A stretch of 64,000 nucleotides of DNA from Macrostomum lignano. Lineage: Eukaryota. Location: assembly GCA_002269645.1 (NCBI GenBank), contig NIVC01002094.1, positions 141,423 through 205,422 of the forward strand, in the 5' to 3' direction. The notes under the pieces are model-generated. The model was not told where the DNA came from, ran no database searches, and saw only the letters and a program-made list of their open reading frames with translations. Positions 1 to 20,500 of this stretch are shown in pieces (within the stretch, counting starts at the first letter, position 1; each line of letters opens with the position of its first letter). Position numbers and translations under genes: made by a program.

Positions 1-249
1 TCGAAAATCGCCCAGAATCTTTTCAGCAAGCTCTTTGGTTAAACCACCCTTGGCGGCCTGGTACCAAAGCTTCAGATCATTTCTTCGCTCTTTCGCAATC
101 ACCTCCATATGGTAGCAGCGGCCGCCAAGCAGAATCTCCAGCGCCTTCATCTGCGAATTGGTGCCAGTTCGCATTAGGCCGGCGCCAATCACTACGGGGC
201 CTGAGGCAGCCTGCTCCTGCGGTGCGCCAGCTCGAAGCATATTAGACAT
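1..249 (-). CDS. Sulfotransferase-family protein (Sulfotransfer_4-like), paralog 1; 5' part only, runs off window start
   Basis: Manual translation from ATG at 249: MSNMLRAGAPQEQAASGPVVIGAGLMRTGTNSQMKALEILLGGRCYHMEVIAKERRNDLKLWYQAAKGGLTKELAEKILGDFR. Same GLMRTGTNS (5'-PSB-like loop) and GGRCYHM motifs as the three complete paralogs. Confidence 0.9.
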   Translation of the reverse strand, partial: MSNMLRAGAPQEQAASGPVVIGAGLMRTGTNSQMKALEILLGGRCYHMEVIAKERRNDLKLWYQAAKGGLTKELAEKILGDFR

Positions 250-1356
250 TCCAATCGAATCAGGAATGCAGTCAAATTTAGCCAAATAACCGTTGTGACA
301 AAAAATACCGTTCTATAAATAATAAGTTTCAGTCCTTTTAGAAAACAAGTGTTTCCATCCGGGTACTTCTTATTTTATTAATTATCAAGTGCTTCACAGG
401 TGCCTAATGTCTGCGCATAGGGCAAGGACTACTCAAATAGGACAGGAAACAACGTTTTCCTGGAAAATTTCCGAAGGCAGATTTTTCAGAAAAAAATGCA
501 TTACGAAGATAAGAGGTTTTCATTTTTTCAGCACAAGAATCGTTATTGCTTTTGATATGTTGTGCCTTTATTATATGTCTATTGATAGTCAATTTAAAGC
601 CTTTTTTAAGAAAATTATGATTCCATGTTAATTTTTTATTTTACGTACATTCTATATATTAAGAATGAAAAAATGCATGGCACAGCTCGGCTCATTGGTT
701 TTATCAATCTATTTTAACATCTCTGTTACACATTGTTACAGTCAGCTAAGAATGACAAGTACGCTTTCTTATTTTTAGGAACTGGATGGACATGTAATTA
801 GGCTAAAAATTAACATAGAACCTTAATCTCCTTAACTAAAAGCTTTATGAATACCAATAGAGCTATAAGAAAGGCAAAGCATATCAAAAGATGAACACTG
901 GGCCTGCCTACTATCAAAAGCAATAACACAATTTTTACGCTAGAAAACGTCAAACCCTTACCTATAACTGTAATATATTTTGGTCGGTAACTGGTCGGTA
1001 ATATTATATTATATTATATATAATGGTCAGTTACCGACACACTTATTGGGCTTTAACTTAGTGCAAAAAAGAGAAAGAAAACGCCTAATGTGACAAAGTT
1101 ATGAAAGGCAAATTTATTGAAATTGTAATAAAACTCGCAACAGGTCAGCTGTGCAAATAATTTTCGCTAGTTGTAAAATTTCGTTACATAATCTAAAATT
1201 GTTGTGAAATTTGTTAAAATTAAACAAAATGAAAAGCGTTCAAATAAAACTACAAGAAAACTTTTTAAGAGAGTTCTTTTCAACCGTAAGTTTCGAAATC
1301 TATACTTTTAGCAATGTAAAATCACATTTATTGAGAGTTAATAAATTAGCTTAAGA

Positions 1357-4300
1357 AGCCTTCTATTGTATCGGTCAAGCAAACCTACGCAGACAGCACT
1401 TCACACCGAACCAGCAGCCTTCTATTGTATAGGTCAGGCAAACCTACGCAGACAGCACTTCACACCGAACCAGCAGCCTTCTATTGTATAGGTCAAGCAA
1501 ACCTACGCAGACAGCACTTCAGACCAAACCAGCAGCCTTCTATTGTATAGGTCAAGCAAACCTACGCAGACAGCACTTCAGACCAAACCAGCAGCCTTCT
1601 ATTGTATAGGTCAAGCAAACCTACGCAGACAGCACTTCACACCGAACCAGCAGCCTTCTATTGTATAGGTCAAGCAAACCTACGCAGACAGCACTTCAGA
1701 CCAAACCAGCAGCCTTCTATTGTATCGGTCAAGCAAACCTACGCAGACAGCACTTCAGACCAAACCAGCAGCCTTCTATTGTATCGGTCAAGCAAACCTA
1801 CGCAGACAGCACTTCAGACCGAACCAGCAGCCTTCTATTGTATAGGTCAAGCAAACCTACGCAGACAGCACTTCACACCGAACCAGCAGCCTTCTATTGT
1901 ATAGGTCAGGCAAACCTACGCAGACAGCACTTCACACCGAACCAGCAGCCTTCTATTGTATAGGTCAGGCAAACCTACGCAGACAGCACTTCAGACCAAA
2001 CCAGCAGCCTTCTATTGTATAGGTCAAGCAAACCTACGCAGACAGCACTTCACACCGAACCAGCAGCCTTCTATTGTATAGGTCAAGCAAACCTACGCAG
2101 ACAGCACTTCAGACCAAACCAGCAGCCTTCTATTGTATAGGTCAAGCAAACCTACGCAGACAGCACTTCAGACCAAACCAGCAGCCTTCTATTGTATAGG
2201 TCAAGCAAACCTACGCAGACAGCACTTCAGACCAAACCAGCAGCCTTCTATTGTATAGGTCAAGCAAACCTACGCAGACAGCACTTCAGACCAAACCAGC
2301 AGCCTTCATATTGTATCGGTCAAGCAAACCTACGCAGACAGCACTTCACACCGAACCAGCAGCCTTCTATTGTATAGGTCAAGCAAACCTACGCAGACAG
2401 CACTTCAGACCAAACAAGCAGCCTTCTATTGTATAGGTCAAGCAAACCTACGCAGACAGCACTTCAGACCAAACCAGCAGCCTTCTATTGTATAGGTCAG
2501 GCAAACCTACGCAGACAGCACTTCACACCGAACCAGCAGCCTTCTATTGTATAGGTCAGGCAAACCTACGCAGACAGCACTTCAGACCAAACCAGCAGCC
2601 TTCTATTGTATAGGTCAAGCAAACCTACGCAGACAGCACTTCACACCGAACCAGCAGCCTTCTATTGTATAGGTCAAGCAAACCTACGCAGACAGCACTT
2701 CAGACCAAACCAGCAGCCTTCTATTGTATAGGTCAAGCAAACCTACGCAGACAGCACTTCAGACCAAACCAGCAGCCTTCTATTGTATAGGTCAAGCAAA
2801 CCTACGCAGACAGCACTTCAGACCAAACCAGCAGCCTTCTATTGTATAGGTCAAGCAAACCTACGCAGACAGCACTTCAGACCAAACCAGCAGCCTTCAT
2901 ATTGTATCGGTCAAGCAAACCTACGCAGACAGCACTTCACACCGAACCAGCAGCCTTCTATTGTATAGGTCAAGCAAACCTACGCAGACAGCACTTCAGA
3001 CCAAACCAGCAGCCTTCTATTGTATAGGTCAAGCAAACCTACGCAGACAGCACTTCAGACCAAACCAGCAGCCTTCTATTGTATAGGTCAGGCAAACCTA
3101 CGCAGACAGCACTTCACACCGAACCAGCAGCCTTCTATTGTATAGGTCAGGCAAACCTACGCAGACAGCACTTCAGACCAAACCAGCAGCCTTCTATTGT
3201 ATAGGTCAAGCAAACCTACGCAGACAGCACTTCAGACCAAACCAGCAGCCTTCTATTGTATAGGTCAAGCAAACCTACGCAGACAGCACTTCAGACCAAA
3301 CCAGCAGCCTTCTATTGTATAGGTCAAGCAAACCTACGCAGACAGCACTTCAGACCAAACCAGCAGCCTTCTATTGTATAGGTCAAGCAAACCTACGCAG
3401 ACAGCACTTCAGACCAAACCAGCAGCCTTCATATTGTATCGGTCAAGCAAACCTACGCAGACAGCACTTCACACCGAACCAGCAGCCTTCTATTGTATAG
3501 GTCAAGCAAACCTACGCAGACAGCACTTCAGACCAAACCAGCAGCCTTCTATTGTATAGGTCAAGCAAACCTACGCAGACAGCACTTCAGACCAAACCAG
3601 CAGCCTTCTATTGTATAGGTCAAGCAAACCTACGCAGACAGCACTTCACACCGAACCAGCAGCCTTCTATTGTATAGGTCAAGCAAACCTACGCAGACAG
3701 CACTTCACACCGAACCAGCAGCCTTCTATTGTATAGGTCAAGCAAACCTACGCAGACAGCACTTCAGACCAAACCAGCAGCCTTCTATTGTATAGGTCAA
3801 GCAAACCTACGCAGACAGCACTTCACACCGAACCAGCAGCCTTCTATTGTATAGGTCAAGCAAACCTACGCAGACAGCACTTCACACCGAACCAGCAGCC
3901 TTCTATTGTATCGGTCAAGCAAACCTACGCAGACAGCACTTCAGACCGAACCAGCAGCCTTCTATTGTATAGGTCAGGCAAACCTACGCAGACAGCACTT
4001 CAGACCGAACCAGCAGCCTTCTATTGTATAGGTCAGGCAAACCTACGCAGACAGCACTTCAGACCAAACCAGCAGCCTTCTATTGTATAGGTCAAGCAAA
4101 CCTACGCAGACAGCACTTCAGACCAAACCAGCAGCCTTCTATTGTATAGGTCAAGCAAACCTACGCAGACAGCACTTCAGACCGAACCAGCAGCCTTCTA
4201 TTGTATAGGTCAAGCAAACCTACGCAGACAGCACTTCAGACCAAACCAGCAGCCTTCTATTGTATAGGTCAAGCAAACCTACGCAGACAGCACTTCAGAC

Positions 4301-4438
4301 CAAACCAGCAGCCTTCTATTGTATAGGTCAAGCAAACCTACGCAGACAGCACTTCAGACCGAACCAGCAGCATTCATATTGTATCGGTCAAGCAAATCTA
4401 CGCAGACAGCACTTCAGACCAAACCAGACAGCAAGGCC
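1357..4438. repeat. 59-bp tandem minisatellite (~52 copies) derived from the 3' end of sulfotransferase paralog 2
   Basis: Unit CTATTGTATAGGTCAAGCAAACCTACGCAGACAGCACTTCAGACCAAACCAGCAGCCTT. Its reverse complement contains TGG TTT GGT CTG AAG TGC TGT CTG CGT AGG TTT GCT TGA, the last codons of the 4388 CDS. Confidence 0.97.
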
Positions 4439-5164
4439 CACAGCCGAGCAGAAGCCGAAATTAGCAAGAGCACTAATTGTGTAAAAGCCAATGGCTTTCT
4501 TCTGAAATTCAGCAGTATCATTCACATTTGGAAACGGTACATCGGGTACCGGCAGCTCCAGGAAGTTGCACAATGGTTCCCAACCATCCGAAACTCGAAA
4601 CACTAACAGTCGCTCTTTGGGAATAGTTCGAATCACCGCCTCGGTGTGACGGTTAAACGCTTCAATCAATTCTTTGTCTGTCATGTCCACTCGAATACCC
4701 AATCGCGAGTCGAAGATGTTGTGATGCAACGGCAGAAAGTAGGTCAGATTGAGAAGCCACAACGATGGGGCCAGCATACAACCCATAGCCTTCATACCCT
4801 TAAAGATGGTACTGCGAACGCTCTCAACCCATCGTTGGGGATCGCGAACGCTCAGCACAAACTTGGCATTGGGATAAATCTTGAGTAGCTCAGGATAGAA
4901 AGCCGCTACAGGAAAGTCTGTTGTAGCAACAAAACCGTCAAAGATTTGGTCAGCCAGCTGTTTTGTTAAACCCTCTTTGGCAGCCTGATTCCACAGCTTC
5001 AAGTGGTGTCGCTTCTGTTTCATGATTACGAACATATGGTAGCACCGGCCGCCAAGCAGAATCTCCAGCGCCTTCATCTGCGAGTTGGTGCCAGTTCGCA
5101 TCAGGCCAACACCAAACACCAATGGACCCGTAGTGGACTGTTGCAACTTGCTATCAAGAGACAT
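4388..5164 (-). CDS. Sulfotransferase-family protein, paralog 2 (intronless, C-terminal hydrophobic anchor)
   Basis: ORF 4388..5266; likely start is the ATG at 5164 (MSLDSKLQ), matching paralog lengths. Motifs GLMRTGTNS, GGRCYHM, LSVRDP..W..S, SDGWEPLC.FL..PVP..PFP..N. Confidence 0.92.
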   Translation of the reverse strand: MSLDSKLQQSTTGPLVFGVGLMRTGTNSQMKALEILLGGRCYHMFVIMKQKRHHLKLWNQAAKEGLTKQLADQIFDGFVATTDFPVAAFYPELLKIYPNAKFVLSVRDPQRWVESVRSTIFKGMKAMGCMLAPSLWLLNLTYFLPLHHNIFDSRLGIRVDMTDKELIEAFNRHTEAVIRTIPKERLLVFRVSDGWEPLCNFLELPVPDVPFPNVNDTAEFQKKAIGFYTISALANFGFCSAVGLAVWFGLKCCLRRFA

Positions 5165-6251
5165 TGCGCTTGCTTGCGATTCAGTTGATGTTAAACAATA
5201 AAAAACGATAGCAGAAATAATTGCGCAAAGGTTACGCTTAGCTCTGAGGCACTGTGGTGGTCGCAACTCACACCCACGGATACTAGAATAACTAGACTAG
5301 ATGGGCCACTCAGCAAATTTGCGTGTAAGCTACTTTCAGTTCAGTAGCAAGTTACAGGGAAGAATTTTAATGTATTTTAAAAGACAAGGTTTATTTATTG
5401 TCTCTTACACCCCCAAGCTTAAACCCTCAAACTCCACACGGAACCTCTACCCCCGTCCCACCGCCCAATTTTTATTACCCTACTCGGTTGTTCCAATCTA
5501 AAGCTGCCATGTACATATCAGTGGACTGGCTAATGTACATTATGGCTGAACCAATTAGCAAGCTGTTTACGCCTGCAAGCTTGGGCTTCTAAACTTATCG
5601 AAGTCATTTCAGCTGCCATTATTTTTATAAAATAACGTACGTATTCTTTATTGCTACTGAACTGAAAGTAGAAAGCTGTTTTACCAAGTATATATGACTG
5701 AGTGGCCCATTTAGTTATTCTAGTATCTGTGCTCACACCCAAAAAATTAATTTTCAACTTTTGGAGATAAAAACGTTCAAGTACGAATGCACTCGTACCA
5801 GACTTTTCAAAATCCATTTTTACTTTTATGAAGATTCTAAGATATACAGCTACATTTGAGCTGGGTGACGAACTTGCTTAAACCCTCGTAACTAACCAAG
5901 GCCAACTGTGCTTAACTTAATTCGCTAACACATGGAGGAACAAAACTTCAATGCAAAATGAGTGCTAGCTTGAAAAAAATTAGCAAAGAAATAACAAACA
6001 GACTAAAGATACACGTTTTATTAGTTTCCATTAGTAACTAGAAATAAAATGGACACGCTGTACTTTTTTTGCAAATTGTAAACTAAAATAATAACAGTAT
6101 AGAATGGTATAATACCGTGACTAGGTATAGCAATGGAAATGAATAAATATTAACATATCTAGTGATAAAGAAATGCGCTAATTATATTGTGGTTTCTTTA
6201 AAATAGATTGTAACTATTCAGATTTTTACCGCGTAAAGTATTATTGGTTAT

Positions 6252-7397
6252 TGGGATATTCCTGAAGGATGGTTTATGGGATATTCCTGAAGGATGGTTT
6301 ATGGGAGAATCCTGAAGGATGGTTTATGGGAGATTTTTGAAGGATGGTTTATGGGAGAATCCTGAAGGATGGTTTATGGGAGAATCCTAAAGGATGGTTT
6401 ATGGGAGAATCCTGAAGGATGGTTTATGGGAGATTTTTGAAGGATGGTTTATGGGATATTCCTGAAGGATGGTTTATGGGAGATTTTTGAAGGATGATTT
6501 ATGGGAGAATCCTGAAGGATGGTTTATGGGAGATTTTTGAAGGATGGTTTATGGGAGAATCCTGAAGGATGGTTTATGGGAGATTTTTGAAGGATGGTTT
6601 ATGGGAGAATCCTGAAGGATGGTTTATGGGAGATTTTTGAAGGATGGTTTATGGGAGAATCCTGAAGGATGATTTATGGGAGAATCCTGAAGGATTGTTT
6701 ATGGGAGATTTTTGAAGGATGATTTATGGGAGAATCCTGAAGGATGATTTATGGGAGAATCCTGAAGGATGGTTTATGGGAGATTTTTGAAGGATGGTTT
6801 ATGGGAGAATCCTGAAGGATGATTTATGGGAGAATCCTGAAGGATTGTTTATGGGAGATTTTTGAAAAATGATTTATGGGAGAATCCTGAAGGATGGTTT
6901 ATGGGAGAATCCTGAAGGATGGTTTATGGGAGATTTTTGAAGGATGGTTTATGGGAGAATCCTGAAGGATGGTTTATGGGAGATTTTTGAAGGATGATTT
7001 ATGGGAGAATCCTGAAGGATGGTTTATGGGAGATTTTTGAAGGATGGTTTATGGGATATTCCTGAAGGATGGTTTATGGGAGATTTTTGAAGGATGATTT
7101 ATGGGAGAATCCTGAAGGATGGTTTATGGGAGATTTTTGAAGGATGGTTTATGGGAGAATCCTAAAGGATGGTTTATGGGAGAATCCTGAAGGATGGTTT
7201 ATGGGAGATTTTTGAAGGATGGTTTATGGGAGAATCCTGAAGGATTGTTTATGGGAGATTTTTGAAGGATGGTTTATGGGAGAATCCTAAAGGATGGTTT
7301 ATGGGAGAATCCTGAAGGATGGTTTATGGGAGATTTTTGAAGGATGGTTTATGGGAGAATCCTGAAGGATGGTTTATGGGAGAATCATGAAGGATGA
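6252..7397. repeat. 25-bp minisatellite downstream of sulfotransferase paralog 3
   Basis: Unit GAAGGATGGTTTATGGGAGAATCCT alternating with a ...GGGAGATTTTT variant. Confidence 0.95.
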
Positions 7398-7487
7398 CTT
7401 ATAGTAGATTCTTAAGCCGACAAAGCCAAAAAGAGAGGCAATGCACTTAAGTCGTGAACTTATTGATAAAAAAATATTTTGCAACTG

Positions 7488-8267
7488 TCAACCAAACCGA
7501 CGCAGAGCGAACTTCAACCCGAACCAGACAATCGCCCCAGCAACCGAGCAGACAGCCAAATTAGTAGTGACACTGGCCATATCGATGAAGTGAGCAAAGA
7601 ACACAAACTCATTAGTGTCTTTAATATGTGGAAACGGTCGATCGGGCACAGGTACACCCAGGTAGCTGCACAGAGGCTCCCAACCATCGGTGACTCGATA
7701 GATCAACAGTCGATCTTTAGGAATCGTTCTTTGTACAGCTTCAGCATGCCGTTCAAAAGCAGCGGTCATCTCCTCTTCAGTCATGTCAAAATTAAACACG
7801 AATCTAGATTGAAATATAGCATCGTGTAACAGTTGGAAGTAGCTGAGATCCCACAGCCACCGAGTCAAAGGTAACATCCGGCCCACAGCTCGATAGACAC
7901 GACCAATAGTGAGTTTCATGCTATTCGACCAACGCTTGGGATCGCGAAGGCTTAAAATGAACTTCGCCTCGGGATAAATCTGCGCCAACTCGGCGTAAAA
8001 CATTGCCGTAGGAAAATCTGCTGCCGCAACAAAACCGTCAAATATTTGATCGGCTAGTTCTTTAGTCAGGCCCTGAGTAGCGGCTTTGTGCCACAGTTTG
8101 AAATGATCCCGCCTCTCAGACATTATCACCTGCATGTGATAGCAACGACCGTTTAGAAGTCTCTCCAAGGCTTTCATCTGCGAATTGGTGCCAGTTCGCA
8201 TCAGGCCTGTGCATATCACTTTTGGCCCACCCTGCGACTGCTCACTTTGAGTATCCGGTTCTGTCAT
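7488..8267 (-). CDS. Sulfotransferase-family protein, paralog 3 (259 aa, intronless)
   Basis: ORF track; GLMRTGTNS, GRCYHM, LSLRDP, DGWEPLC motifs; hydrophobic C-terminus. Confidence 0.93.
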   Translation of the reverse strand: MTEPDTQSEQSQGGPKVICTGLMRTGTNSQMKALERLLNGRCYHMQVIMSERRDHFKLWHKAATQGLTKELADQIFDGFVAAADFPTAMFYAELAQIYPEAKFILSLRDPKRWSNSMKLTIGRVYRAVGRMLPLTRWLWDLSYFQLLHDAIFQSRFVFNFDMTEEEMTAAFERHAEAVQRTIPKDRLLIYRVTDGWEPLCSYLGVPVPDRPFPHIKDTNEFVFFAHFIDMASVTTNLAVCSVAGAIVWFGLKFALRRFG

Positions 8268-8394
8268 GAGTAGTTTCGATTTTTTTATTGCTGGTCTGCT
8301 TTTGATTTGCTGAAATAGAGGTTTATATATTGTTTAGGGAATTTTGTGAAGAAACAAAAAAGACCATCCTTTATGAACAAAAATAAATGGTAAT

Positions 8395-9195
8395 TAGACT
8401 CTTGTGGGAAATTAGACGATACTTTTGAGGGAAATAAGAGACTCTTTATGGCGAATTAGAGGACACTATTGAGGGGAGTTAGAGGAGACTCTTGAAGGGA
8501 ATTAGAGGAGACTCTTGAGGGGAATTAGAGGAGACTCTTGAAGGGAATTAGAGGAGACTCTTGAGGAGAATTAGAGGACACTATTGATGGGAATTAGAGG
8601 AGACTCTTGAGGAGAATTAGAGGACACTATTGATGGGAATTAGAGGAGACTCTTGAGAGGAATTAGAGGAGACTCTTGAGGGGAATTAGAGGAGACTCTT
8701 AAGGAGAATTAGATGAGAATCTTGAGGGGAATTAGAGGAGACTCTTGAGGAGAATTAGAGGACACCATTGAGGGGAATTAGAGGAGACTCTTGGGAGGAA
8801 TTAGAGGAGACTCTTGAGGGGAATTAGAGGAGACTCTTAAGGAGAATTAGATGAGAATCTTGAGGGGAATTAGAGGAGACTCTTGATGGGAATTAGAAGA
8901 ATCTCTTGAGGGGAATTAGAGGACACTATTTAGGGGAATTAGAGGAGACTCTTGAGGGGAATTAGAGGACACTATTGATGGGAATTAGAGGAGACTCTTG
9001 AGGGGAATTAGAGGACACTATTGATGGGAATTAGAGGAGACTCTTGAGGGGAATTAGAGGAGAATCTTGAGAGGAATTAGACGGCACTATTTAGGGGAAT
9101 TAGAGGAGACTCTTGAGGGAAATTAGGAAACTTTCAAGGAGAATTAGAGGAGGCTCTTAAATGAATTAGAGACACTAGAGAGGAATTATGAATGT
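8395..9195. repeat. ~23-bp minisatellite downstream of sulfotransferase paralog 4
   Basis: Unit GAGGGGAATTAGAGGAGACTCTT with variants (GACACTATT, GAATCTT). Confidence 0.93.
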
Positions 9196-9406
9196 CCATC
9201 GATGGAAATCAGAGGATTGACATAGTGAAAATACTAAAATAATGTTTACAATAATAAAGCTCATATGTTATCGACGTGATAAAGGCTGTTGAAAAATTAT
9301 TTATTCAAAAAAATAATCAGTTAAGATTTTAAAACTCCTATCAATAACTATAAAAAATGAATAATTATTGCATTGAGTTAATTGCACAAAAATTCAATTG
9401 AGATTG

Positions 9407-10201
9407 CTAGCTCTGAGCACAGGTAGAGGACCGCAGCAAGTATTTAACACCAACCCAGACACCTCCAAAGACAGCTGAACAAACTGCTAAATTAAGCAGA
9501 GGCCCGACAATCTTGAGCCCGACAATTGTTTCTAAGAATCGTTTCGTATCGTTCAGATGAGGAAACGGTTCGTTCGAAGGCACGGGCAGCTCCAGGAACT
9601 TACACAACGGTTCCCAACCGTCTGACACTCGAAATATCAACAGTCTCTCCTTCGGTATGGTTCGAATCACTGTCTCATTGTGACGGTTGAATGCTTCGAT
9701 CATTTCCGCATCAGACATGTCAAAATTGAAGCCCAAACGAGAGCCCAGCACAGCGTCACTCAGAGGCAAGTAGTGAGACAGCCCCAGAAGCCATCGCACT
9801 GGCGGTAGCATGTACTCAACTGTCAATTTAGACTGCAGAATGGTAGCCCGGACACTTCTCACCCAATCAATTGGATCGCGAATGCTCAGTACAAACTTGG
9901 CGTCAGGATAAATCTGCATCAATTCTTTGTAGAAATGAGCAGCTGGAAAGTCTGTACAAGCCAGAAAGTCGTCAAATATTTCCTCAGCCAATTCTTTGCT
10001 CAAGCCTTGGATAGCAGCTCGATGCCACAGCTGCAGATGTGACAGCTTCTCTTCCATCACAATGTCCATATGATAGCAGCGGCCGCCAAGCAGCATCTCC
10101 AGCGCCTTCATCTGCGAATTGGTGCCAGTTCGCATCAGGCCAGCGCCAATCACACGAAGACCAGCTGAAGATTTGTTTTTCCTACTAGCAGCAGAAGACA
10201 T
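9407..10201 (-). CDS. Sulfotransferase-family protein, paralog 4 (264 aa, intronless)
   Basis: ORF track; same motif set as paralogs 1-3. Confidence 0.93.
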   Translation of the reverse strand: MSSAASRKNKSSAGLRVIGAGLMRTGTNSQMKALEMLLGGRCYHMDIVMEEKLSHLQLWHRAAIQGLSKELAEEIFDDFLACTDFPAAHFYKELMQIYPDAKFVLSIRDPIDWVRSVRATILQSKLTVEYMLPPVRWLLGLSHYLPLSDAVLGSRLGFNFDMSDAEMIEAFNRHNETVIRTIPKERLLIFRVSDGWEPLCKFLELPVPSNEPFPHLNDTKRFLETIVGLKIVGPLLNLAVCSAVFGGVWVGVKYLLRSSTCAQS

Positions 10202-10731
10202 CAGTTTTGCCTGATTTAATGTTCTTTTTCAGAAACTGTAATTTGAGATTTTTTGTCGCTATTGGTGTTAAAATTTCACGTGAAGTTGGTGAATTTCGAA
10301 TCGTGTTAGATGGGATCGCTCACTAAACTTCTCAGTACATAAATTATGTATTTCAATTTCAAGTCCCTTTTTCTGGATGGGGTATTACTTCAGAATTGAA
10401 ACTTAACAAAGTTATTGCTAATAACCTATAAAGAGTCTTGCAGAAGGCATAATGTGGCAGAAATATTAGATATAATTGCTCTCAAATGAATATTTAATTT
10501 TGTTTTCTCTGTTATTCTGGAAAAAGTACGATATGGCTGCAACTACAAAAGTATCATCAACTAACTACTAACGAGTTTGTGTAGTACATGGATTGTAATA
10601 ATTAAATGTTACTCATTACCTTGTATATCATCAATAAATGCCTGTACAATGACTTGAACTGAGTATGGATAAACTAGAATAAAAATTTCTATTTATTGGA
10701 TAGATAGAAATTGACCCACTCGGAACAATTT

Positions 10732-10945
10732 ATGTCCTTGAGCAAGACACTTAACTCTGCATTGCTTCAGTTCACTCAGCTGTAAAATGGGTGCAAAACT
10801 GGGCGACCCCCCCCCCCCCAGTCCTTGGATTGAACAGCCGTACGCAGCCTTCAGATGCGCCGCGCAACAGCTGCGGCTGAGCTGTCGGTTGCAAACTTGC
10901 CCATCAAGACAGGTGTAATCTGTTATTATTATAATTATAATTGTT
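10732..10945 (+). mobile_element. 5'-truncated CORE-SINE-like element
   Basis: GTCCTTGAGCAAGACACTTAACTCTGCATTGCTTCAGTTCACTCAGCTGTAAAATGGG resembles the MIR/CORE domain (GACCTTGGGCAAGTCACTTAACCTCTCTG..CTCAGTTTCCTCATCTGTAAAATGGG, recalled consensus). Ends in a TTA-rich tail; no tRNA head seen. Confidence 0.65.
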
Positions 10946-11902
10946 ATTTTTATCTATTAGATTCTAAAAAATAGTAATAATAGCATCTAAAATCAGATTT
11001 CATCACTGAATGTCTACTTCACGTGGACAGTGACCCTTAATTGGTTTTGAACTTGTTATAGAAAAATTGGACAAGTGGATAAGTTATCTAATCTATCACT
11101 AAATCAATCAATCAAAATAAAGGAAAATAAGCGCAAGTCAAATAAAAGAGAAAACAGAAAAGTGATGCATATTTTTTTATTTTTAGATGCAAATAAACTA
11201 CACCTAATTCTATAACACATATATATATATTATCCAATGGGTAATTATACAATTATTACACAGGTAAAGACAGTCACGTGTTAGTAAATTCATAGCTCCT
11301 CTAGTTTAGTTTTAAAGATAGAATAAGGAGAAACAGCAAAACACTTAGTCAAGATAATAATATAGATATAGCCTAAACTAAGGTCGATTTTTTTACACAA
11401 GAAATACTTTTGCCCCAAAATAAAAACTCTACTAATAGTAATGGTATCATCGCGTGTTACTATTCAAATTAAATTAATTCCTGTTACACGTAGATCGGGG
11501 GGGGATTTCACAGCAGCCACTTGTCGACTGGCTCTCATGGACCAGCTGGGAACCAACAATCGAAATCCAGCGTTTGTTTTATTTTGAGTCGCCCCAGAGT
11601 AGTTTCGGAGTCGTTACAGGTAACATAGGTAAACTAGGAAAGAAGCGACTCTAGACGACTCTGGGGACCGTAGGGTCGGTATCGAAGGCGTGCCAGAGTC
11701 TATAACAACTCTATTTAGAGTACAATTGGATTTAGTAGAAAGTTGAGCGCCAACCCAGACTTAAGCATCTAGGTTATTTATTATTTTTTAAAAATCTGAG
11801 ACTACCCTTGCAGCTAAAACCAACAAAACACGCATGCTAAAGTCCACCCTAAAATATTGTTTTTAGTATCGTATTTTCAGTTTTAAAACTCTTTTTTTAA
11901 GT

Positions 11903-14900
11903 TCAGTGCCGACCAGAAGCGGCTGCAGACTGGCTGCTTCCGGTTTTGGTGCTATTTTTAGCAGCAAATTCGGCCATTCTCCGCTCCAGTTCCGGCCGGA
12001 AGTGCCGGATGAGGCCCTGGGCTGGCCAAGCGGCTCCGTCCCCAAGGGCGCAGATTGTGTGGCCTTCAATCTGCTTGGACACCTCCCACAGCAGGTCGAT
12101 CTCCTCCGGGCGGGCGTCCCCGGTGACAAAGCGATTGGTTAATCGCATCATCCAGCCGGTGCCCTCCCGGCAGGGTGTGCATTGGCCGCAGCTCTCGTGC
12201 TTGTAGAAGTCCATCAGGCGGGCGATGCATTTCACAACATCAGCCTGCTTGTTCATCACGATTAGGGCGGCTGTGCCTGCGGGGGGGGGCAGTTCACGTT
12301 GGTTAGGATTAGGGATAATTTTACAATGATGATTAGTGACGATTCTTAGGGTGGATTAGTGACGATTCTTAGGGTGGATTAGTGACGATTCTTAGGGTGG
12401 ATTAGTGACGATTCTTAGGTGGATTAGTGACGATTCTTAGGGTGGATTAGTGACGATTCTTAGGGTGGATTAGTGACGATTCTTATGGTGGATTAGTGAC
12501 GATTCTTATGGTGGATTAGTGACGATTCTTATAAGGGGTGGATTAGTGACGATTCTTATAAGGGGTGGATTAGTGACGATTCTTATAAAAGGCGGATTAA
12601 CAACAATCCCGAGAGGTGGATTAACGACAATCCTGAGAAGCGGATTAACGACAATCCTGAGTGGCGGATTAACGACAATCCTGAGGCGGATTGGCGACAA
12701 TCCTGAGAGGCGCCTCAAAGACGCACCAATGCACCGTGAACGTGAACTCACCCAGAGCAGTCTGAGCCTGAACCAGCGAGTCGAAGTCCATCAGCACAGT
12801 GTCGCACACATTCTTAGGAATCAGCGGAGTGGAGCTGCCGCCCGGGATCACGGCCAGCAGGTTGTCCCAGCCGCCAATGACGCCACCGGCGTGCCGCTCG
12901 ATCAGCTCCTTCATGGTGATGGACATCTCCTCCTCCACTGTGCAGGGATTGTTGACGTGCCCGGAGATGTTGAACAGTTTCGTGCCGCGATTGCGATCCC
13001 GACCGAAGCTGGCGAACCAGGCGCCCCCGCGTCGGCAGACGGTCGGCGCCGCGGCGATGGTCTCGACGTTGTTTACCGTGGTCGGACAGCCGAACACGCC
13101 GACATCGGCTGGAAACGGCGGCTTCAGACGCGGCTTGCCGGCTTTGCCTTCCAGAGATTCAATCAGCGAAGTCTCCTCGCCGCAGATGTAGGCGCCGGCG
13201 CCGCGGTGCACGTAGATGTCGTAGTCATAGCCGCTGCCGCAGGCGTTCTTGCCGAGGAAGCCGGCGTCGTAGGCTTCGTTGATGGCGGCCTGGGGAAAAG
13301 GTTGAGACGGAAGGGTTGATCACTCTATCAATTCGTCTATTGATCACTCTATCAATTCGTCTATTGATCACTCTATCAATTCGTCTATTGATCACTCTAT
13401 CAATTCGTCTATTGATCACTCTATCAATTCGTCTATTGATCACTCTATCAATTCGTCTATTGATCAATCTATCAATTCGTCTATTGATCACTCTATCAAT
13501 TCGTCTATTAATCACTCTATCAATTCGTCTATTGATCAATCTATCAATTCGTCTATTGATCACTCTATCAATTCATCTATTGATCAATCTATCAATTCGT
13601 CTATTGATCACTCTATCAATTCATCCATTCATCAATCTATCAATTCATCTATTGATCAATCTATCAATCAATTCGTCTATAAATCAATCTATCAATTCGT
13701 CTATTGATCACTTTATCAATTCATCCATTCATCAATCTATCAATTCATCTATTGATCAATCTATCAATCAATTCGTCTATAAATCAATCTATCAATTCGT
13801 CTATTGATCACTCCATCAATTCGTCTATTGATCAATCTATCAATTCGTCTATTAATAAATCTATCAATTCATCTATTTATCAATCTATCAATTCATCTAT
13901 TGATCAATCTATCAATTCATCTATTTATCACTCTATCAATTCGTCTATTGATCACTCTATCAATTCGTCTATTGATCACTCTATCAATTCGTCTATTGAT
14001 CAATCTATCAATTCGTCTATTGATCACTCTATCAATTCATCTATTGATCAATCTATCAATTCGTCTATTGATCACTCTATCAATTCGTCTATTGATCACT
14101 CTATCAATTCGTCTATTGATCACTCTATCAATTCGTCTATTGATCACTCTATCAATTCGTCTATTGATCACTCTATTAATTCGTCTATTGATCACTCTAT
14201 CAATTCGTCTATTGATCACTCTATCAATTCGTCTATTGATCACTCTATTAATTCGTTTATTGATCACTCTATCAATTCGTCTATTGATCACTCTATCAAT
14301 TCGTCTATTGATCAATCTATCAATTCGTCTATTGATCAATCTATCAATTCGTCTATTGATCACTCTATCAATTCGTCTATTGATCACTCTATCAATTCGT
14401 CTATTGATCACTCTATCAATTCGTCTATTGATCAATCTATCAATTCGTCTATGGATCACTCTATCAATTCGTCTATTGATCAATCTATCAATTCGTCTAT
14501 TGATCAATCTATCAATTCGTCTATTGATCACTCTATTAATTCGTCTATTGATCACTCTATCAATTCGTCTATTGATCACTCTATCAATTCGTCTATTGAT
14601 CACTCTATCAATTCGTCTATTGATCACTCTATCAATTCGTCTATTGATCACTCTATCAATTCGTCTATTGATCACTCTATCAATTCGTCTATTGATCACT
14701 CTATCAATTAGTCTATTGATCACTCTATCAATTCGTCTATTGATCACTCTATTAATTCGTCTATTGATCACTCTATCAATTCGTCTATTGATCAATCTAT
14801 CAATTCGTCTATTGATCAATCTATCAATTCGTCTATTGATCACTCTATCAATTCGTCTATTGATCAATCTATCAATTCGTCTATTGATCACTCTATTAAT

Positions 14901-16098
14901 TCGTCTATTGATCACTCTATCAATTCGTCTATTGATCACTCTATCAATTAGTCTATTGATCACTCTATCAATTCGTCTATTGATCAATCTATCAATTCGT
15001 CTATTGATCACTCTATCAATTCGTCTATTGATCACTCTATCAATTCGTCTATTGATCAATCTATCAATTCGTCTATTGATCAATCTATTAATTCGTCTAT
15101 TGATCACTCTATCAATTCGTCTATTGATCACTCTATCAATTCATCTATTGATCACTCTATCAATTCGTCTATTGATCAATCTATCAATTCGGCTATTGAT
15201 CAATCTATCAATCAATTCGTCTATTGATCAATCTATCAATTCGTCTATTGATAAATCTATCAATTCGTCTATTGATCACTCTATCAATCAATTCGTCTAT
15301 AAATCAATCTATCAATTCGTCTATTGATAAATCTATCAATTCGTCTATTGATAAATCTATCAATTCTTTAGTCGACTGATCAATCTATCAATTCTTTAGT
15401 CGATTGATCAATCTAGACTATCAATTCATCCATTCATCAATCTAACAATTCATCTAATGATCAATCTATCAATTCTCTAGTTGATTGATCAATCTATCAA
15501 TGTATCTATTGATCACTACTAATACAACGGAATCTGTTCCAATCAATTAATTAGTTAATAATCTCACCTGCAGAGTGCAGGCCTCCCTATAGAACTCGCC
15601 CCGAATGTAGATATAAGCCGCCCTGGCTCCCATAGCAACGCCGGAAACGAGGCAGCCCTCAACCAGAGTGTGCGGATCGTGCCGCATGATCTCCCGGTCT
15701 TTGCAGGTGCCAGGCTCTCCCTCATCAGCATTGACAACCAGATACCTGGGCCGGCCATCGTCCGGCTTGTGCATAAACGACCATTTCAAACCGGTTGGAA
15801 AGCCGGCTCCGCCCCGGCCGCGCATGCCGCTAACCTTCATCTCGTTAGTAATCCAGTCCCGGCCCTTCAGCACAATCTCTTTAGTCTTGTACCAGTGCCC
15901 GCGAGACATGGCCGCCTTCAGGCGCCAGTCGTGCCGACCGTACAGATTAGTGAAGATTCGATCCTCGTCTTTCAGCGGACCGAACACCGTCTTCTCTTGC
16001 TTTGGCGGCGGCGGAGGCGGTGCTGCCGCGCCTGCCGACAGCTGACGGAGAGGCAGGCGCATCAACGAAGATGAAGACGCTTGGAAGCTGCGAAGCAT
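11903..16098 (-). CDS. NDUFV1: NADH:ubiquinone oxidoreductase 51-kDa flavoprotein subunit, 3 exons, ~480 aa
   Basis: Exons 16098-15568, 13289-12752, 12276-11903 (GT-AG; total 1443 nt, in frame). Motifs [60 protein letters not shown]; N-terminal transit-peptide-like sequence. Confidence 0.97.
12325..12710. repeat. 23-27-bp minisatellite in NDUFV1 intron 2
   Basis: GATTAGTGACGATTCTTAGGGTG units grading into GGATTAACGACAATCCTGAG units. Confidence 0.9.
13315..15520. repeat. 24-bp minisatellite filling NDUFV1 intron 1 (~2.2 kb)
   Basis: Unit ATTGATCACTCTATCAATTCGTCT; explains the ITLSIRLL / INRRIDRV / SINSSIDH repeat ORFs. Confidence 0.96.
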
Positions 16099-16172
16099 AT
16101 TCTTGCTGTTGACTAAAGCACAATTTAACAATTAATTTCTTTTAAATATAGGCGATAACTCGCATAAATGAA

Positions 16173-16383
16173 GACATTGTCAGGGTGGCGATTCTCCATG
16201 GCATTGTCAGGTGGCGATTCTTAATGGCATTGTCAGGTGGCGATTCTTAATGGCATTGTCAGGGTGGGGATTTTCAATGACATTGTCAGGGTGGCGATTC
16301 TCAATGGCATTGTCAGGTGCCGATTCTTAATGGCATTGTCAGGGTGGCGATTCTCAATGGCATTGTCAGGGTGGCGATTCCTA
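16173..16383. repeat. Short 26-27-bp tandem array just upstream of the NDUFV1 start
   Basis: Unit GGCATTGTCAGG(G)TGGCGATTCT(C/T)AAT, about 8 copies. Confidence 0.88.
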
Positions 16384-17589
16384 AATATAGAGCTATTTAG
16401 AGACTGTTTTGGGGGCGATTTCACAAGCGGAGGTGTAAACAAATCTTCAATTAAAAAACAAAAGAAACACGGGAATTTCAAACAGATTAATAATGAAGGC
16501 TAAACTATAAAAGGTCAATAAGGTTGTAAATCATATCTTATCGCTTTTTTAGCATGAATACACAGCCAAAGGAATGAATTTACAGATTAGATCATATCGT
16601 ACAGAATTACAGGAATACAGTGAAATTTCCTACTAAAATATAAGCTAATATTAATTATTTTGATTTGAATTTAAACACGCCATAAAAGCCGGAGATATGG
16701 TATGCACTAAGCAAAGTAGATATTTAAAGGAGCTTCAAGTGCTACTACGAGATACCCCTAGCAACCTGAAAGTTGATTGAAAGACATTGTACTTTCGTTT
16801 TATGGATACTTAAACAGTAGAAATTCTGTAATATTTTACGTATAAAATTAAAAATAATCCTAATTTATTAGTTACACTACTTATAGTAGAAATATAAGAA
16901 AAATATTGGGTAATTAATAATAAAAACAATGCAAATACTTGATACTATCTACTAGTAGTAAAACTATTAGTTCAATGTTATTATATTTTTTACAATTTTT
17001 CAGCTGTAGACTTTTGCCTACATACCATACCTCCAGCGTTACTTCTTGACAAATCAGAATTAAAAATCGACAATAAAAATGGTAAATATAGTGAGTTAGG
17101 ACATTAAAGTCCAAGCAATTCAATCATATCGTAACAGCCTCATTTACGCATGTATATATTGGTAAGAAATACATCAATAAATATGTTTGTATATAATATA
17201 ATAAAACATGGTCAATAATAAAAATATGTAATTAATATTACATACAACGCAATCGGTCCAAGTGGAATGGAAGAGCTTAATTTAAAAAAGGAATTGAAGC
17301 ATTTTGGATTTGGTAAAAATTCGATGTAAAAAGGACAGAGCTTTTTTTATAATAACAAACTTGGTCGCGAATGAAACAACAGAAAAAACACGGTTTTACT
17401 GAATGAAACAGACAAATACTACTTGAAGTAGTGCTTTTTAGAGCCGCGTTGGAAAACACCGTTTCCAATGGTTTGTTAAAACGAAAACAAATTTAAAAAA
17501 CCAGTAAACTTAAAAACACAAAAAATGTTCCTGGAAGACACGTAAACACTGTAAAGGCTCATTCGCCTAAATATAACATCATAGTTGCC

Positions 17590-20500
17590 TCAGATCACTA
17601 AATAGTTGAGCATCTTCTGCGGATCCAAAGCCTCGTAGATGTAAAGTGGATCTCGATGACCGTTGCGTGATTTAACTGTAGCGCTGGCCCTGGCCAATTC
17701 GTCTTTGAATCTGGAAAAAAAATCGGAGTAATATTGTTTTCATCTACTGTAAGTAGAAATATAAGTAAAAAGCAACTATAAAAATTCCAGACAGAAAATT
17801 TTACTTTTAACATTGTTTTCATCTACTGTAAGTAGAAATATAAGTAAAAAGCAGCTATAAAAATTCCAGACAGAAAATTTTACTTTTAACATTGTTTTCA
17901 TCTACTGTAAGTAGAAATATAAGTAAAAAGAGGCGAAACTCTTACTCTTGCAGGATTTGCATCGAGGCCTGATCGTGGCTATATTGTAGCTCGTATTCGC
18001 CAAGCGGCTGTTCGCCTTTCTGTCGCTGGCAAAGACGGAACGATAGCACGGTGTCGATGAACTCGCGACGGCAGGGTAGCGATTGCAGACTGGCCTCAAG
18101 AGGCTGCTCTTCCTTTAGGTGGTAAAGCAGCATTGGAGTATTGAAGTATATGTTAGTTTAGTGGTAGTTCAGGAGTGATTGTAAGGGTAGTTCAGGGGTG
18201 ATTGTAAAGGTAGTTCAGGGTGATTGTAAGGGTAGTTCAGGGGTGATTGTAAGGGTAGTACAGGAGTGATCGTGGGGGTAGTTCAGGGGTGATTGTAAAG
18301 GTAGTTCAGGGGTGATTGTAAGGGTAGTTCAAGGGTGATTGTAAGGGTAGTTCAGGAGTGATCGTGGGGGTAGTTCAGGGGTGATTGTAAGGGTAGTTCA
18401 GGAGTGATCGTGGGGGTAGTTCAGGGGTGATTGTAAAGGTAGTTCAGGGTGATTGTAAGGGTAGTTCAGGGGTGATTGTAAGGGTAGTTCAGGAGTGATC
18501 GTGGGGGTAGTTCAGGGGTGATTGTAAAGGTAGTTCAGGGGTGATTGTAAGGGTAGTTCAGGGGTGATTGTAAGGGTAGTTCAGGGATGATTGTAAGTGT
18601 AGTTCAGGGGTGACTGTAAAGGTAGTTCAGGGTGATTGTAAGGGTAGTTCAGGAGTGATCGTGGGGGTAGTTCAGGGGTGATTGTAAGGGTAGTTCAGGA
18701 GTGATTGTAAGAATAGTTCAGGCGGATTTTGAGAGTAGTTCAGGAGTGATTGTAAGGGTAGTTCAGGAGTGATTGTAAGGGAAGTTCAGGGTTACAGCAA
18801 TACAGCAAGGGTAGTTCAGGGGTGATTGTATGGGTAGTTCAGGAGTGATTGTAAGGGTAGTTCAGGGATGATTGTAAGGGTAGTTCAGGGGTGATTGTAA
18901 GGGTAGTTCAGGGATGATTGTAAGGGTAGTTCAGGGGTGATTGTAAGGGTAGTTCAGGGATGATTGTAAGGGTAGTTCAGGAGTGATTGTAAGGGAAGCT
19001 CAGGGTTACAGCAATACAGCAAGGGTAGTTCAGGGGTGATTGTATGGGTAGTTCAGGAGTGATTGTAAGGGTAGTTCAGGGGTGATTGTATGGGTAGTTC
19101 AGGAGTGATTGTAAGGGTAGTTCAGGGATGATTGTAAGGGTAGTTCAGGGGTGATTGTAAGGGTAGTTCAGGGATGATTGTAAGGGTAGTTCAGGGGTGA
19201 TTGTAAGGGTAGTTCAGGGATGATTGTAAGGGTAGTTCAGGAGTGATTGTAAGGGAAGCTCAGGGTTACAGCAATACAGCAAGGGTAGTTCAGGGGTGAT
19301 TGTATGGGTAGTTCAGGAGTGATTGTAAGGGTAGTTCAGGAGTGATTGTAAGGGTAGTTCAGGAGTGATTGTATGGGTAGTTCAGGCGGATTTTAAGAGT
19401 AGTTCAGGGGCTATTATCTAGGACATTAGGTAAGGACAATTACTATATTATAGAGTTACAAATTCAGTGATTAGATTAATTGAAGATAGTTTCAACCCGA
19501 CTGTGATAGCAGATGATGAATGTATTGGGGAATTTCTAAAAACTCTCTAAGCATACTATAGCACATGTACAAACGCAAACCTGCGGATCCTGAGGCAGGC
19601 AGCCGTGCAGAGCCAGAGGATAGTTAGGCGGGAAGCCGTACTCATCGAACTGGGGCTGCCAGGCAGCAGAGCCGTGCACACAGATCATGTACATCAGATT
19701 AGTGAGCAGCGGGATCAGCTCGTCAACGTGCTGAATGCCGGATTTGCCAGGCAAGCCTTTCAATCCGAGGCCGCCCTTCTCCAACGGGTTGGTCATCTCC
19801 GCCCACCAGCCCTGCAGCTCGATGTCCTCCATCAGCTTGCGCTTCATCGCCTCCATGGGATTGGCGTAGTACAGACGGGCCGCCTTGTCGCAGTGGCCAG
19901 CGATGGCCTTGTAGATCAGCATGGCGTCCTCACTGCGGGAAGGGGAGTTCCGTGATGAGACTGATGATCTTGGGGGGAGGGGGGGCTGCCAAGCAACTGA
20001 ATATTTGGGAGGCTGGCTTAGCAACTGAGGATCTGGGAGGCTGGCCCAGCAACTGAATATTTGGGAGGCTGGCCCAGCAACTGAGGATCTGAGAGGCTGG
20101 CCCAGCAACTGAGGATCTGAGAGGCTGGCCCAGCAACTGGATATTTGGGAGGCTGGCCCAGCAACTGCGGATCTGGGAGGCTGGCAAAGCAACTGAATAT
20201 TTGGGAGGCTGGCCAAGCAACTGCGGATCTGGGAGGCTGGCCCAGCAACTGAGGATCTGGGAGGCTGGCAAAGCAACTGAATATTTGGGAGGCTGGCCCA
20301 GCAACTGAATATTTGGGAGGCTGGCTCAGCAACTGAATATTTGGGAGGCTGGCCCAGCAACTGCGGATCTGGGAGACTGGCCCAGCAACTGAAGATCTGG
20401 GAGGCTGGCCCAGCAACTGAGGATCTGGGAGGCTGGCCCAGCAACTGAGGATCTGGGAGGCTGGCCCAGCAACTGAGGATCTGGGAGACTGGCCCAGCAA

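What the first reader, a model, noticed from the sequence alone, without database searches (positions are those of the whole stretch)
1327..4438. A 3-kb minisatellite born from a gene's own stop-codon region, apparently inside its 3'UTR
The 59-bp unit is the last 12 codons of sulfotransferase paralog 2 (WFGLKCCLRRFA), its TGA, and ~20 nt of UTR, copied ~52 times directly downstream. The first AATAAA on the gene strand after the stop appears to be at 1332-1327, just beyond the far end of the array. This implies that an original ~60-nt 3'UTR was stretched to ~3 kb, so the mRNA would carry ~52 copies of its own terminal coding sequence (inference). The seed sequence, direction and founder unit are all readable, which gives a rare direct view of minisatellite birth. 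Possible effects are long-3'UTR NMD, multiplied RBP/miRNA sites, or repeat-triggered small RNAs against this paralog.
Basis: partly seen in the sequence, partly recalled or inferred. Interest (0 to 1): 0.72.

Follow-up and report, generated by a model that had tools for sequence, protein, structure and literature searches.

The report
Old minisatellite copying a gene's stop region

Summary
Window 1357-4432 holds 52.1 head-to-tail copies of a 59-bp unit (97% matches). Unit 1 (4427-4368, minus strand) is the real end of a single-exon Sulfotransfer_4 gene (CDS 5164-4388): 12 codons WFGLKCCLRRFA, TGA and 19-20 nt of flank. The first AATAAA on the gene strand is at 1332-1327.

The window is Macrostomum lignano Mlig_3_7, contig NIVC01002094.1. 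The same gene and array, with identical junctions, occur in two other contigs, with 33 units in one and 28 and 31 units on a duplicated gene-plus-array cassette in the other. So the array is not an assembly artefact. It is also not a fresh birth, because it predates an old cassette duplication. It turns over quickly: 52 versus 33 units between copies whose CDS is 100% identical.

The array is tolerated because each unit carries the stop codon, so the ORF is unchanged. Tandem repeats cover 32% of this window and a published 15% of the genome.

Whether the array lies in the mature 3'UTR cannot be decided here. The PAS argument is weak, although annotation numbering hints that the array is transcribed in a polycistronic unit. 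My verdict is a new member of a known kind (a boundary-spanning VNTR, like the F7 intron-7 VNTR), of modest interest.

The parts
4388..5164 (-). Single-exon CDS (258 aa plus stop) of a Sulfotransfer_4-family protein with a hydrophobic C-terminal segment and a basic tail ...AVWFGLKCCLRRFA*
   Evidence: ORF. Pfam PF17784 E=5.5e-64. Identical to annotated M. lignano proteins P0001 and P0103.
4368..4427 (-). Unit 1 of the array, the in-situ founder position: last base of the Val codon, 12 codons, TGA (4390-4388) and 20 nt of 3' flank. It is a 60-nt variant (AGA, CCGATAC, AATATGAATG).
1357..4367 (-). 51 non-coding units (47 of 59 nt, a few of 60 nt, last one truncated). All keep the TGA. There is a 9-10-unit higher-order block HAAAA(D)FE...
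1327..1332 (-). First canonical AATAAA on the gene strand after the stop, 24 nt beyond the array. It is probably the ancestral poly(A) signal, now 3,055 nt from the stop.
   Evidence: Present in the flanks of W, L002 and L001b but not L001a. Positional counterpart CAATAAG in the paralog at 7488.
1333..1356 (-). Unique 3' flank TCTTAAGCTAATTTATTAACTCTC between the truncated last unit and the AATAAA. Its first bases TCT are the inferred distal microhomology.
1..249 (-). Start of the next same-strand Sulfotransfer_4 paralog (runs off the window). It is a possible downstream cistron.
   Evidence: (L001 17541-18272)
7488..8267 (-). Upstream paralog (259 aa) ending ...VWFGLKFALRRFG*. It is followed by its own unrelated 25-bp x46 array (6245-7396).
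9407..10201 (-). First paralog (264 aa). It is followed by a 23-bp x33 array (8396-9158).
5275..5731 (.). MITE-like insertion with terminal inverted repeats, about 110 nt upstream of the ATG.

Best explanation
This is an established, selectively near-neutral minisatellite (VNTR) in Macrostomum lignano.

Origin (inferred): a 59-bp segment spanning the stop codon of a Sulfotransfer_4 gene was duplicated in tandem, probably by slippage between two short TCT microhomologies 59 nt apart. A T>G change at the new junction is fixed in every unit. The duplication then expanded.

Tolerance (shown): each unit carries the gene's own in-frame TGA, so the first unit still ends the ORF normally and the protein is unchanged. 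The same process inside a CDS destroys the gene, as seen in a paralog copy in L002.

Evolution (shown): the array evolves by unequal exchange or replication slippage of single units and multi-unit blocks, with array-specific homogenisation. Copy number differs (52, 33, 28, 31) among the four assembled copies while both junctions stay fixed.

Age (shown): the array is older than a tandem duplication of the whole gene-plus-array cassette.

Transcription (inferred, not shown): RNA polymerase probably reads through the array, as part of a long 3'UTR or an intercistronic stretch of a polycistronic unit. The displaced AATAAA at 1332-1327 is the ancestral poly(A) signal. I expect little function beyond lengthening that region.
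For: Array and unit content.

Source organism and contig.

The same 5' junction (..GCTGT|CTGGTTTGG) and 3' junction (GAAGGCT|TCTTAAGCTA) occur in all four copies, with 52, 33, 28 and 31 units.

W and L002 have a 100% identical CDS and a 99.8% identical upstream kilobase, yet differ by 19 units in blocks.

Higher-order periodicity is seen at lag 7 in L001a (TRF period 418) and lag 10 in W. Mean differences per unit are 0.6-2.5 within arrays and 2.8 between W and L001a.

The L001 cassette duplication has flanks of 71-86% identity while the CDS stays 97.6% identical.

The C-terminal motif is conserved in paralogs without the array. All 136 non-coding units keep TGA.

Tandem repeats cover 32% of the window and 15% of the genome. 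The assembly is redundant because of the DV1 karyotype (PMC5730564). Repeats inflate intergenic distances in M. lignano operons (PMC8629364).

A 70-bp x6 array inside the CDS of a paralog, in L002 only, shows the same process acting without the stop-codon 'safety'.
Against: No transcript, poly(A)-site or small-RNA data could be reached, so the neutral reading and the read-through claim are both inferences.

The microhomology is only 3 nt and needs an extra T>G change, so the initiating mechanism is not proven.

The variants in the ex-coding part of the silent units look coding-like: 5 of 7 variable columns are third codon positions and 6 of 9 changes are synonymous. A purely neutral array does not predict this.

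Array lengths come from one PacBio-based assembly and may be imprecise.
Confidence: 0.8

Rival explanations
1. One reading: the whole array lies in the mature mRNA as a roughly 3-kb 3'UTR ending at the AATAAA at 1332-1327. It changes the fate of this paralog's mRNA through long-UTR NMD, about 50 GU-rich protein-binding sites, or small RNAs.
For: There is no AATAAA or ATTAAA between the stop and 1332. The AATAAA just past the array is kept in three of four copies. It is positionally matched by CAATAAG in the neighbouring paralog. The sense strand is G/U-rich.
Against: The AATAAA is lost in copy L001a, although its CDS is intact. The neighbouring paralog shows that genes here lack a canonical AATAAA before their arrays anyway. 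Sense RNA from four units is no more structured than shuffles (z = +1.87), so it does not form dsRNA on its own. Copy number ranges from 28 to 52 with no sign of constraint.
Confidence: 0.35
2. The array is outside the mature mRNA. Cleavage and polyadenylation occur in the first unit or units at weak signals, so the array is intergenic, or intercistronic spacer that is discarded.
For: Forty-eight units contain AATAGA, a known weak variant of the hexamer in other animals (my own knowledge). It is followed 12 nt later by GGTTTGGTCTG...GTGCTGTCTG, a GU-rich sequence like a downstream element. The GenBank gene set excluded transcripts overlapping repeat annotations, yet this gene was kept in all three contigs. 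Repeats are common between cistrons of M. lignano operons.
Against: Unit 1 in W and L002 has AATATG rather than AATAGA. Hexamer usage in M. lignano is not documented in the papers I read. The criteria of the annotation filter are unknown.
Confidence: 0.35
3. The array is an assembly artefact, such as a collapsed or inflated repeat or a chimeric join.
For: The single assembly is PacBio-based, redundant and repeat-rich.
Against: Four independent instances in three contigs share exact junctions. Their variant maps are different but alignable (KBAABAF...DAAE versus KO-ABAF...DAAE). The flanks differ by indels and substitutions.
Confidence: 0.03
4. The silent units act as a reservoir that exchanges with the coding unit. 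Unequal crossover or conversion moves array units into the expressed position, so selection on the protein tail filters array variants, and variants such as Leu>Val can be swapped in.
For: Five of 7 variable columns in the ex-coding 36 nt are third codon positions (hypergeometric P = 0.03). Six of 9 changes are synonymous (P = 0.005 under uniform mutation). 105 of 136 silent units still encode the exact peptide and 28 encode a single L>V. The CTC and GCC variants occur both in coding units (L001a/b) and in array units.
Against: The density of variable columns is the same in the ex-coding part (7/36) and the ex-UTR part (4/20). With a transition-biased null the synonymous excess is only marginal. 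One of the sites is a CpG. The test was post hoc on very few sites.
Confidence: 0.1

Closest known systems
Human F7 intron-7 37-bp VNTR, whose first element spans the exon 7 / intron 7 boundary (PMC1557585)
   Same: It is a minisatellite seeded from a segment that spans a functional gene boundary. The signal (there the 5' splice site, here the stop codon) is reiterated in every unit. Only the first copy is used, so the gene product is unchanged.
   Different: The boundary here is stop codon / 3' flank rather than exon / intron. The array is far longer (28-52 units against a handful). The downstream signals here are inert for translation rather than competing pseudo-sites.
Classical 3'UTR or 3'-flank VNTRs, such as the SLC6A3/DAT1 40-bp 3'UTR VNTR and the HRAS1 downstream minisatellite (from my own knowledge, not checked here)
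   Same: The unit is tens of bp and sits at the 3' end of a gene. Copy number varies between copies and there are internal variant repeats.
   Different: Those units are not copies of the gene's own terminal codons. It is not shown that this array lies within the mature mRNA.
Microhomology-mediated tandem duplication, MTD (S. pombe, PMC8639346)
   Same: It is a likely initiating event: a duplication of the interval between two short direct microhomologies (here TCT...TCT, 59 nt apart).
   Different: Only 3 nt of microhomology can be inferred, and the junction base is G rather than the expected T. MTDs are usually two-copy and reversible, whereas this one expanded to dozens of units.
Repeat-inflated intergenic regions of M. 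lignano operons (PMC8629364) and the genome-wide tandem-repeat load (PMC5730564)
   Same: Same organism and same class of sequence. The array lies between same-strand genes that are annotated elsewhere in this cluster as multi-gene transcriptional units (Mlig019790 g1/g2 with a 23-mer array between them).
   Different: Those papers treat repeats in bulk. None describes an array seeded by a gene's own stop region.

Membership tests
Minisatellite / VNTR | Head-to-tail tandem array with a unit of about 10-100 bp and a length of 0.5-30 kb | tested here: met
   59 bp x 52.1 = 3,076 bp, 97% matches
Minisatellite / VNTR | Copy-number variation between alleles or copies with fixed flanks | tested here: met
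   52, 33, 28 and 31 units with identical junctions in three contigs
Minisatellite / VNTR | Interspersed variant repeats and block (higher-order) structure that indicate unequal exchange | tested here: met
   24 unit types. Maps of W and L002 align with block gaps. Minima at lag 7 and lag 10.
Minisatellite / VNTR | Shared core motif with other minisatellites of the genome | tested here: not met
   GATTCT is shared by five 23-27-bp arrays of the window, but not by the 59-mer
3'UTR VNTR | Array lies between the stop codon and the used poly(A) site of the mature mRNA | not testable with these tools
   Only hexamer positions are available. T-fill poly(A) data exist publicly but cannot be queried here.
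Boundary-spanning VNTR (F7 IVS7 type) | First unit spans a functional boundary, so the signal is reiterated in each unit | tested here: met
   Unit 1 holds the real stop. All 136 further units in four arrays keep TGA in the same position.
Microhomology-mediated tandem duplication | Direct microhomology at both ends of the duplicated interval | tested here: inconclusive
   The 5' context is GCTG[TCT]GG and the 3' context is GGCT[TCT]TAAG. The observed junction GGCT-G-CTGG needs an extra T>G change.
Sulfotransfer_4 (PF17784), for the host gene | Full-length match above Pfam's gathering score | tested here: met
   216 bits against a cutoff of 22.8, profile positions 2-215 of 215
Intercistronic region of an SL-trans-spliced operon | Upstream and downstream genes in one transcriptional unit, with the downstream gene SL-trans-spliced | not testable with these tools
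   There is only a hint. In L002's contig, Mlig024016 g3/g4 are preceded by exactly two annotated genes, one of them this gene. Names are hidden and no SL-read data are available.

The most novel reading that the evidence does not exclude
The array is not inert. Its roughly 50 silent copies of the terminal 12 codons plus stop exchange with the expressed first unit by unequal crossover or conversion. Selection on the protein's tail then keeps the silent units 'coding-like' (third-position and synonymous bias). Array length, through a 1.6-3 kb GU-rich 3'UTR or intercistronic spacer, sets different expression levels for otherwise identical gene copies.
Probability: 0.1. Interest if true: 0.55.

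Novelty: new member of a known kind. Interest (0 to 1): 0.3.

Why it matters
The locus is a clean teaching example. It shows why a tandem duplication that includes the stop codon is tolerated, while the same process inside a CDS of the same cluster (the L002 70-mer) kills the gene. Four copies of the locus also give a ready-made series for measuring minisatellite turnover against flank divergence in a model flatworm.

There are practical consequences too. Such arrays split RNA-seq-based transcript models and can mislead 3'UTR and operon annotation in M. lignano. They also complicate primer, RNAi-probe and knock-in design for this gene family.

It does not open a new class of element. Its regulatory relevance is unproven.

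Tried and rejected
- Exact-sequence look-ups of the 258-aa proteins, hoping to find RNA-derived contigs, found nothing on record.
- I tried to read the transcriptional-unit names of the gene and its downstream neighbour. The names are not given for these proteins.
- Rfam scan of the whole window: no family reached its gathering score.
- RNA folding of four units gave z = +1.87, less stable than shuffles. I therefore rejected self-folding dsRNA as a source of small RNAs.
- The test for a shared minisatellite core linking the 59-mer to the other arrays was negative for the 59-mer.
- A full-text search for a VNTR that 'spans the stop codon' found no paper. Wasik et al. 2015 is not held.
- Assembly artefact was rejected, because four instances have distinct but alignable variant maps.
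- 'The gene captured its C-terminus from a pre-existing satellite' was rejected. The tail motif is conserved in paralogs without the array and the 29-mer core occurs nowhere else in the window.
- The bacterial, viral and metagenome collections were not scanned, because this is an animal genome.
Full report
**What is there.** TRF reports one array at window 1357-4432 with period 59, 52.1 copies, 97% matches and no indels. On the minus strand a single-exon ORF runs from the ATG at 5164 to the TGA at 4390-4388. It encodes a 258-aa Sulfotransfer_4 protein (PF17784, 216 bits).

The gene ends ...GTC TGG TTT GGT CTG AAG TGC TGT CTG CGT AGA TTT GCT TGA. The array unit is CTGGTTTGGTCTGAAGTGCTGTCTGCGTAGGTTTGCTTGACCTATACAATAGAAGGCTG. 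That is one base of the Val codon, the 12 codons WFGLKCCLRRFA, TGA and 19 nt of flank. Unit 1 (4427-4368) is the real coding end. The last unit is truncated at ...GAAGGCT (1357) and is followed by unique sequence TCTTAAGCTAATTTATTAACTCTC and then AATAAA at 1332-1327.

That AATAAA is the first one on the gene strand after the stop, and there is no ATTAAA in between. A 29-nt core of the unit occurs 52 times, only inside the array, against 0 expected by chance.

**Where it comes from.** The protein is 100% identical to annotated proteins of Macrostomum lignano. Exact look-ups place it in assembly GCA_002269645.1 (Mlig_3_7) on three contigs:
- NIVC01002094.1 (locus L003) is the window itself. It gives the same TRF rows, and a unique 41-mer from the window is found only there.
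- NIVC01001518.1 (locus L002).
- NIVC01001483.1 (locus L001).

Wudarski et al. 2017 report that this assembly is redundant because the DV1 line carries extra large chromosomes. They find 180 Mb in non-repeat blocks that are at least 95% identical, and simple plus tandem repeats make up 15% of the genome (PMC5730564). In this window the arrays that TRF scores highly cover 32% of the bases.

**The array is shared, variable and not young.**
- L002 carries the same gene with 33 units.
- L001 carries the gene-plus-array cassette twice in tandem. Copy a is the gene at 10001-10789 with 28 units, mostly 60-mers in a 7-unit higher-order repeat. Copy b is the gene at 14279-15055 with 31 units.
- All four copies have the same 5' junction (..GCTGT|CTGGTTTGG) and the same 3' junction (GAAGGCT|TCTTAAGCTA). 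This indicates a single origin.
- W and L002 have a 100% identical CDS and a 99.8% identical upstream kilobase. Their arrays nevertheless differ by 19 units, and their unit maps align with block gaps: KBAABAFCIDDADDAAHAAAAFEAAHAAAADFEAMHAAAADFEDINADAAE against KO-ABAFEI--ADD-----AB--AAH--APB--A-HAAAADFE----DAAE. Their downstream flanks differ by indels, so they are distinct loci and not one locus assembled twice.
- Units are more alike within an array than between W and L001a: 0.6-2.5 against 2.8 differences per unit. There are periodicity minima at lag 7 (L001a) and lag 10 (W). This is the usual signature of unequal exchange and concerted evolution.
- The spacer between the two L001 cassettes contains a diverged copy of the downstream flank, 2.5 decayed units of the upstream 25-mer array, and the gene's upstream region at only 71-86% identity. 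The two CDSs are 97.6% identical. So the cassette duplication is old, the array already existed at that time, and CDS plus array have probably been kept similar by conversion (inference).
- W's upstream and CDS resemble copy a (97-99.4%), while its downstream flank resembles that of copy b (92%). This fits a one-cassette locus derived from a two-cassette one by exchange between the arrays (inference).

**Direction and mechanism of origin.** The tail (V)WFGxKxxLRRxx is conserved in the cluster's other paralogs (…VWFGLKFALRRFG, …LWFGAKFCLRRWG, …AWFGAKYCLRKYF), and they have no 59-mer array. The repeat was therefore copied from the gene, and the gene did not capture its tail from a repeat.

The two contexts are GCTG[TCT]GGTTT at the 5' end and GGCT[TCT]TAAG at the 3' end. 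They suggest slippage between TCT microhomologies 59 nt apart. Every inter-unit junction reads GGCT-G-CTGG, so a T>G change must have been fixed before or during expansion (inference). Microhomology-mediated tandem duplication is a documented source of such events (PMC8639346).

Because the unit includes the stop, the ORF is untouched. All 136 silent units in the four arrays keep TGA.

**A younger birth in the same cluster.** In L002 only, the first paralog of the cluster contains a 70-bp x6.1 array (98% matches) made of its own mid-CDS sequence. This shifts the frame and ends the ORF. The window's copy (9407-10201) is intact. This is a copy-specific, evidently recent birth, and it shows what happens when the duplicated segment does not include the stop.

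Each paralog is also followed by its own unrelated minisatellite. The 25-mer has 46, 46.7 and about 94 units, and the 23-mer has 33, 31 and 14 units, across the three contigs.

**Is the array in the mRNA?** This cannot be decided here.

- Removing the array leaves 42 nt between the stop and CAATAAA.
- The neighbouring paralog has CAATAAG about 35 nt after its stop.
- The AATAAA is kept in three of the four copies.

- Copy L001a has lost the AATAAA (CAGTTAACACG), although its CDS is intact.
- The neighbouring paralog also has no canonical AATAAA before its own array.
- 48 units carry AATAGA followed by GU-rich sequence. AATAGA is a weak hexamer variant in other animals (my own knowledge).

On transcription, M. 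lignano has many polycistronic transcriptional units resolved by SL trans-splicing, and repeats are known to inflate its intercistronic distances (PMC5730564; PMC8629364). In L001 the two upstream paralogs are annotated as Mlig019790 g1 and g2, with the 23-mer array between them. In L002's contig, Mlig024016 g3 and g4 are preceded by exactly two annotated genes, the truncated next paralog and this gene. They are probably g2 and g1, so that unit would read through the 33-unit array (inference; names not shown).

The sense RNA of four units is no more structured than shuffles (z = +1.87), and no Rfam family matches. T-fill poly(A)-site data that would settle the question exist publicly.

**An unexplained detail.** In the ex-coding 36 nt of the 136 silent units, 5 of 7 variable columns are third codon positions (P = 0.03). 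Six of 9 distinct changes are synonymous (P = 0.005 under uniform mutation, weaker with a transition bias). 105 units still encode the exact peptide and 28 encode a single L>V. Two variants (CTC, GCC) also occur in coding units of L001.

However, the density of variable columns is the same in the ex-UTR part (4/20 against 7/36). The numbers are small and the test was post hoc. It may reflect exchange between the coding unit and the array, or it may be chance.

**Comparison and verdict.** The element meets the defining features of a minisatellite/VNTR. Its closest described analogue is the F7 intron-7 VNTR, whose first element spans the exon/intron boundary (PMC1557585). Here the boundary is the stop codon. 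I found no paper describing a stop-spanning VNTR, but the kind is known, the genome is saturated with such arrays, and no function is shown.

I rate it a new member of a known kind with modest interest (0.3). The 'birth' framing is not supported and the '3'UTR' framing is untested.

Noticed in passing
L002 4948-5374 (NIVC01001518.1); the counterpart in the window, 9407-10201, is intact: A 70-bp x6.1 tandem array (98% matches) made of the mid-CDS sequence of the first sulfotransferase paralog. It frameshifts the gene and the ORF ends at L002 5089. It is present in only one of the three contigs, so it is a recent, copy-specific minisatellite birth from coding DNA.
   Followed up: partly
window 6245-7396 and 8396-9158; L001 6571-8936 and 5249-5575; L002 7793-8959 and 6098-6809: Each tandem paralog is followed by its own unrelated minisatellite (a 25-mer and a 23-mer). 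Their copy numbers also differ between contigs: 46, 46.7 and about 94 units for the 25-mer, and 33, 31 and 14 for the 23-mer.
   Followed up: partly
window 1357-4367 and the arrays in L001 and L002: Variants in the ex-coding part of the silent units are biased to third codon positions and synonymous changes (5/7 columns, 6/9 changes). 105 of 136 silent units keep the exact 12-aa peptide. This is unexplained and may be chance.
   Followed up: partly
L001 10001-16844: The gene-plus-array cassette is duplicated in tandem (28 and 31 units). The second copy has about 8 amino-acid changes and is not annotated. The window's single cassette looks like 'copy a' upstream and 'copy b' downstream, as if it was produced by exchange between the two arrays.
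   Followed up: partly
window 6245-23132 (arrays at 6245, 12331, 16175, 21646, 22487): Five different 23-27-bp minisatellites share the hexamer GATTCT/AGAATC. Only 8 of 500 shuffles reach this level of sharing. It may be a common core or common descent. The 59-mer lacks it.
   Followed up: partly
window 5275-5731; window about 257-706; L001 13100-14060: A MITE-like element with terminal inverted repeats lies about 110 nt upstream of the gene's ATG. Other copy-specific insertions sit in the flanks, at window 549-890 (a long imperfect inverted repeat) and as about 1 kb in the L001 spacer.
   Followed up: partly
window 56051-64000, minus strand: About 1.49-kb tandem coding repeats encode a Thr/Pro-rich mucin-like protein (open ORF of 1,290 aa at 56409-60281). 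They lie next to thrombospondin-type-1-like Cys-rich ORFs (53973-56020).
   Followed up: no
window 12331-16380 and 18163-23132: Introns of an NDUFV1-like gene (exons at 12669-13211 and 15547-16131) and of a PLAT/lipoxygenase-like gene (20735-21571, 22384-23592) are largely filled with 23-28-bp minisatellites.
   Followed up: no
L001 1778-1880: An interstitial (TTAGGG)x17 tract lies next to a 23-mer array whose unit itself contains TTAGGG (window 12331-12585).
   Followed up: no
window 26385-27662, plus strand: Two adjacent ORFs (232 and 188 aa) look like fragments of a transposase-type gene. They were not searched.
   Followed up: no
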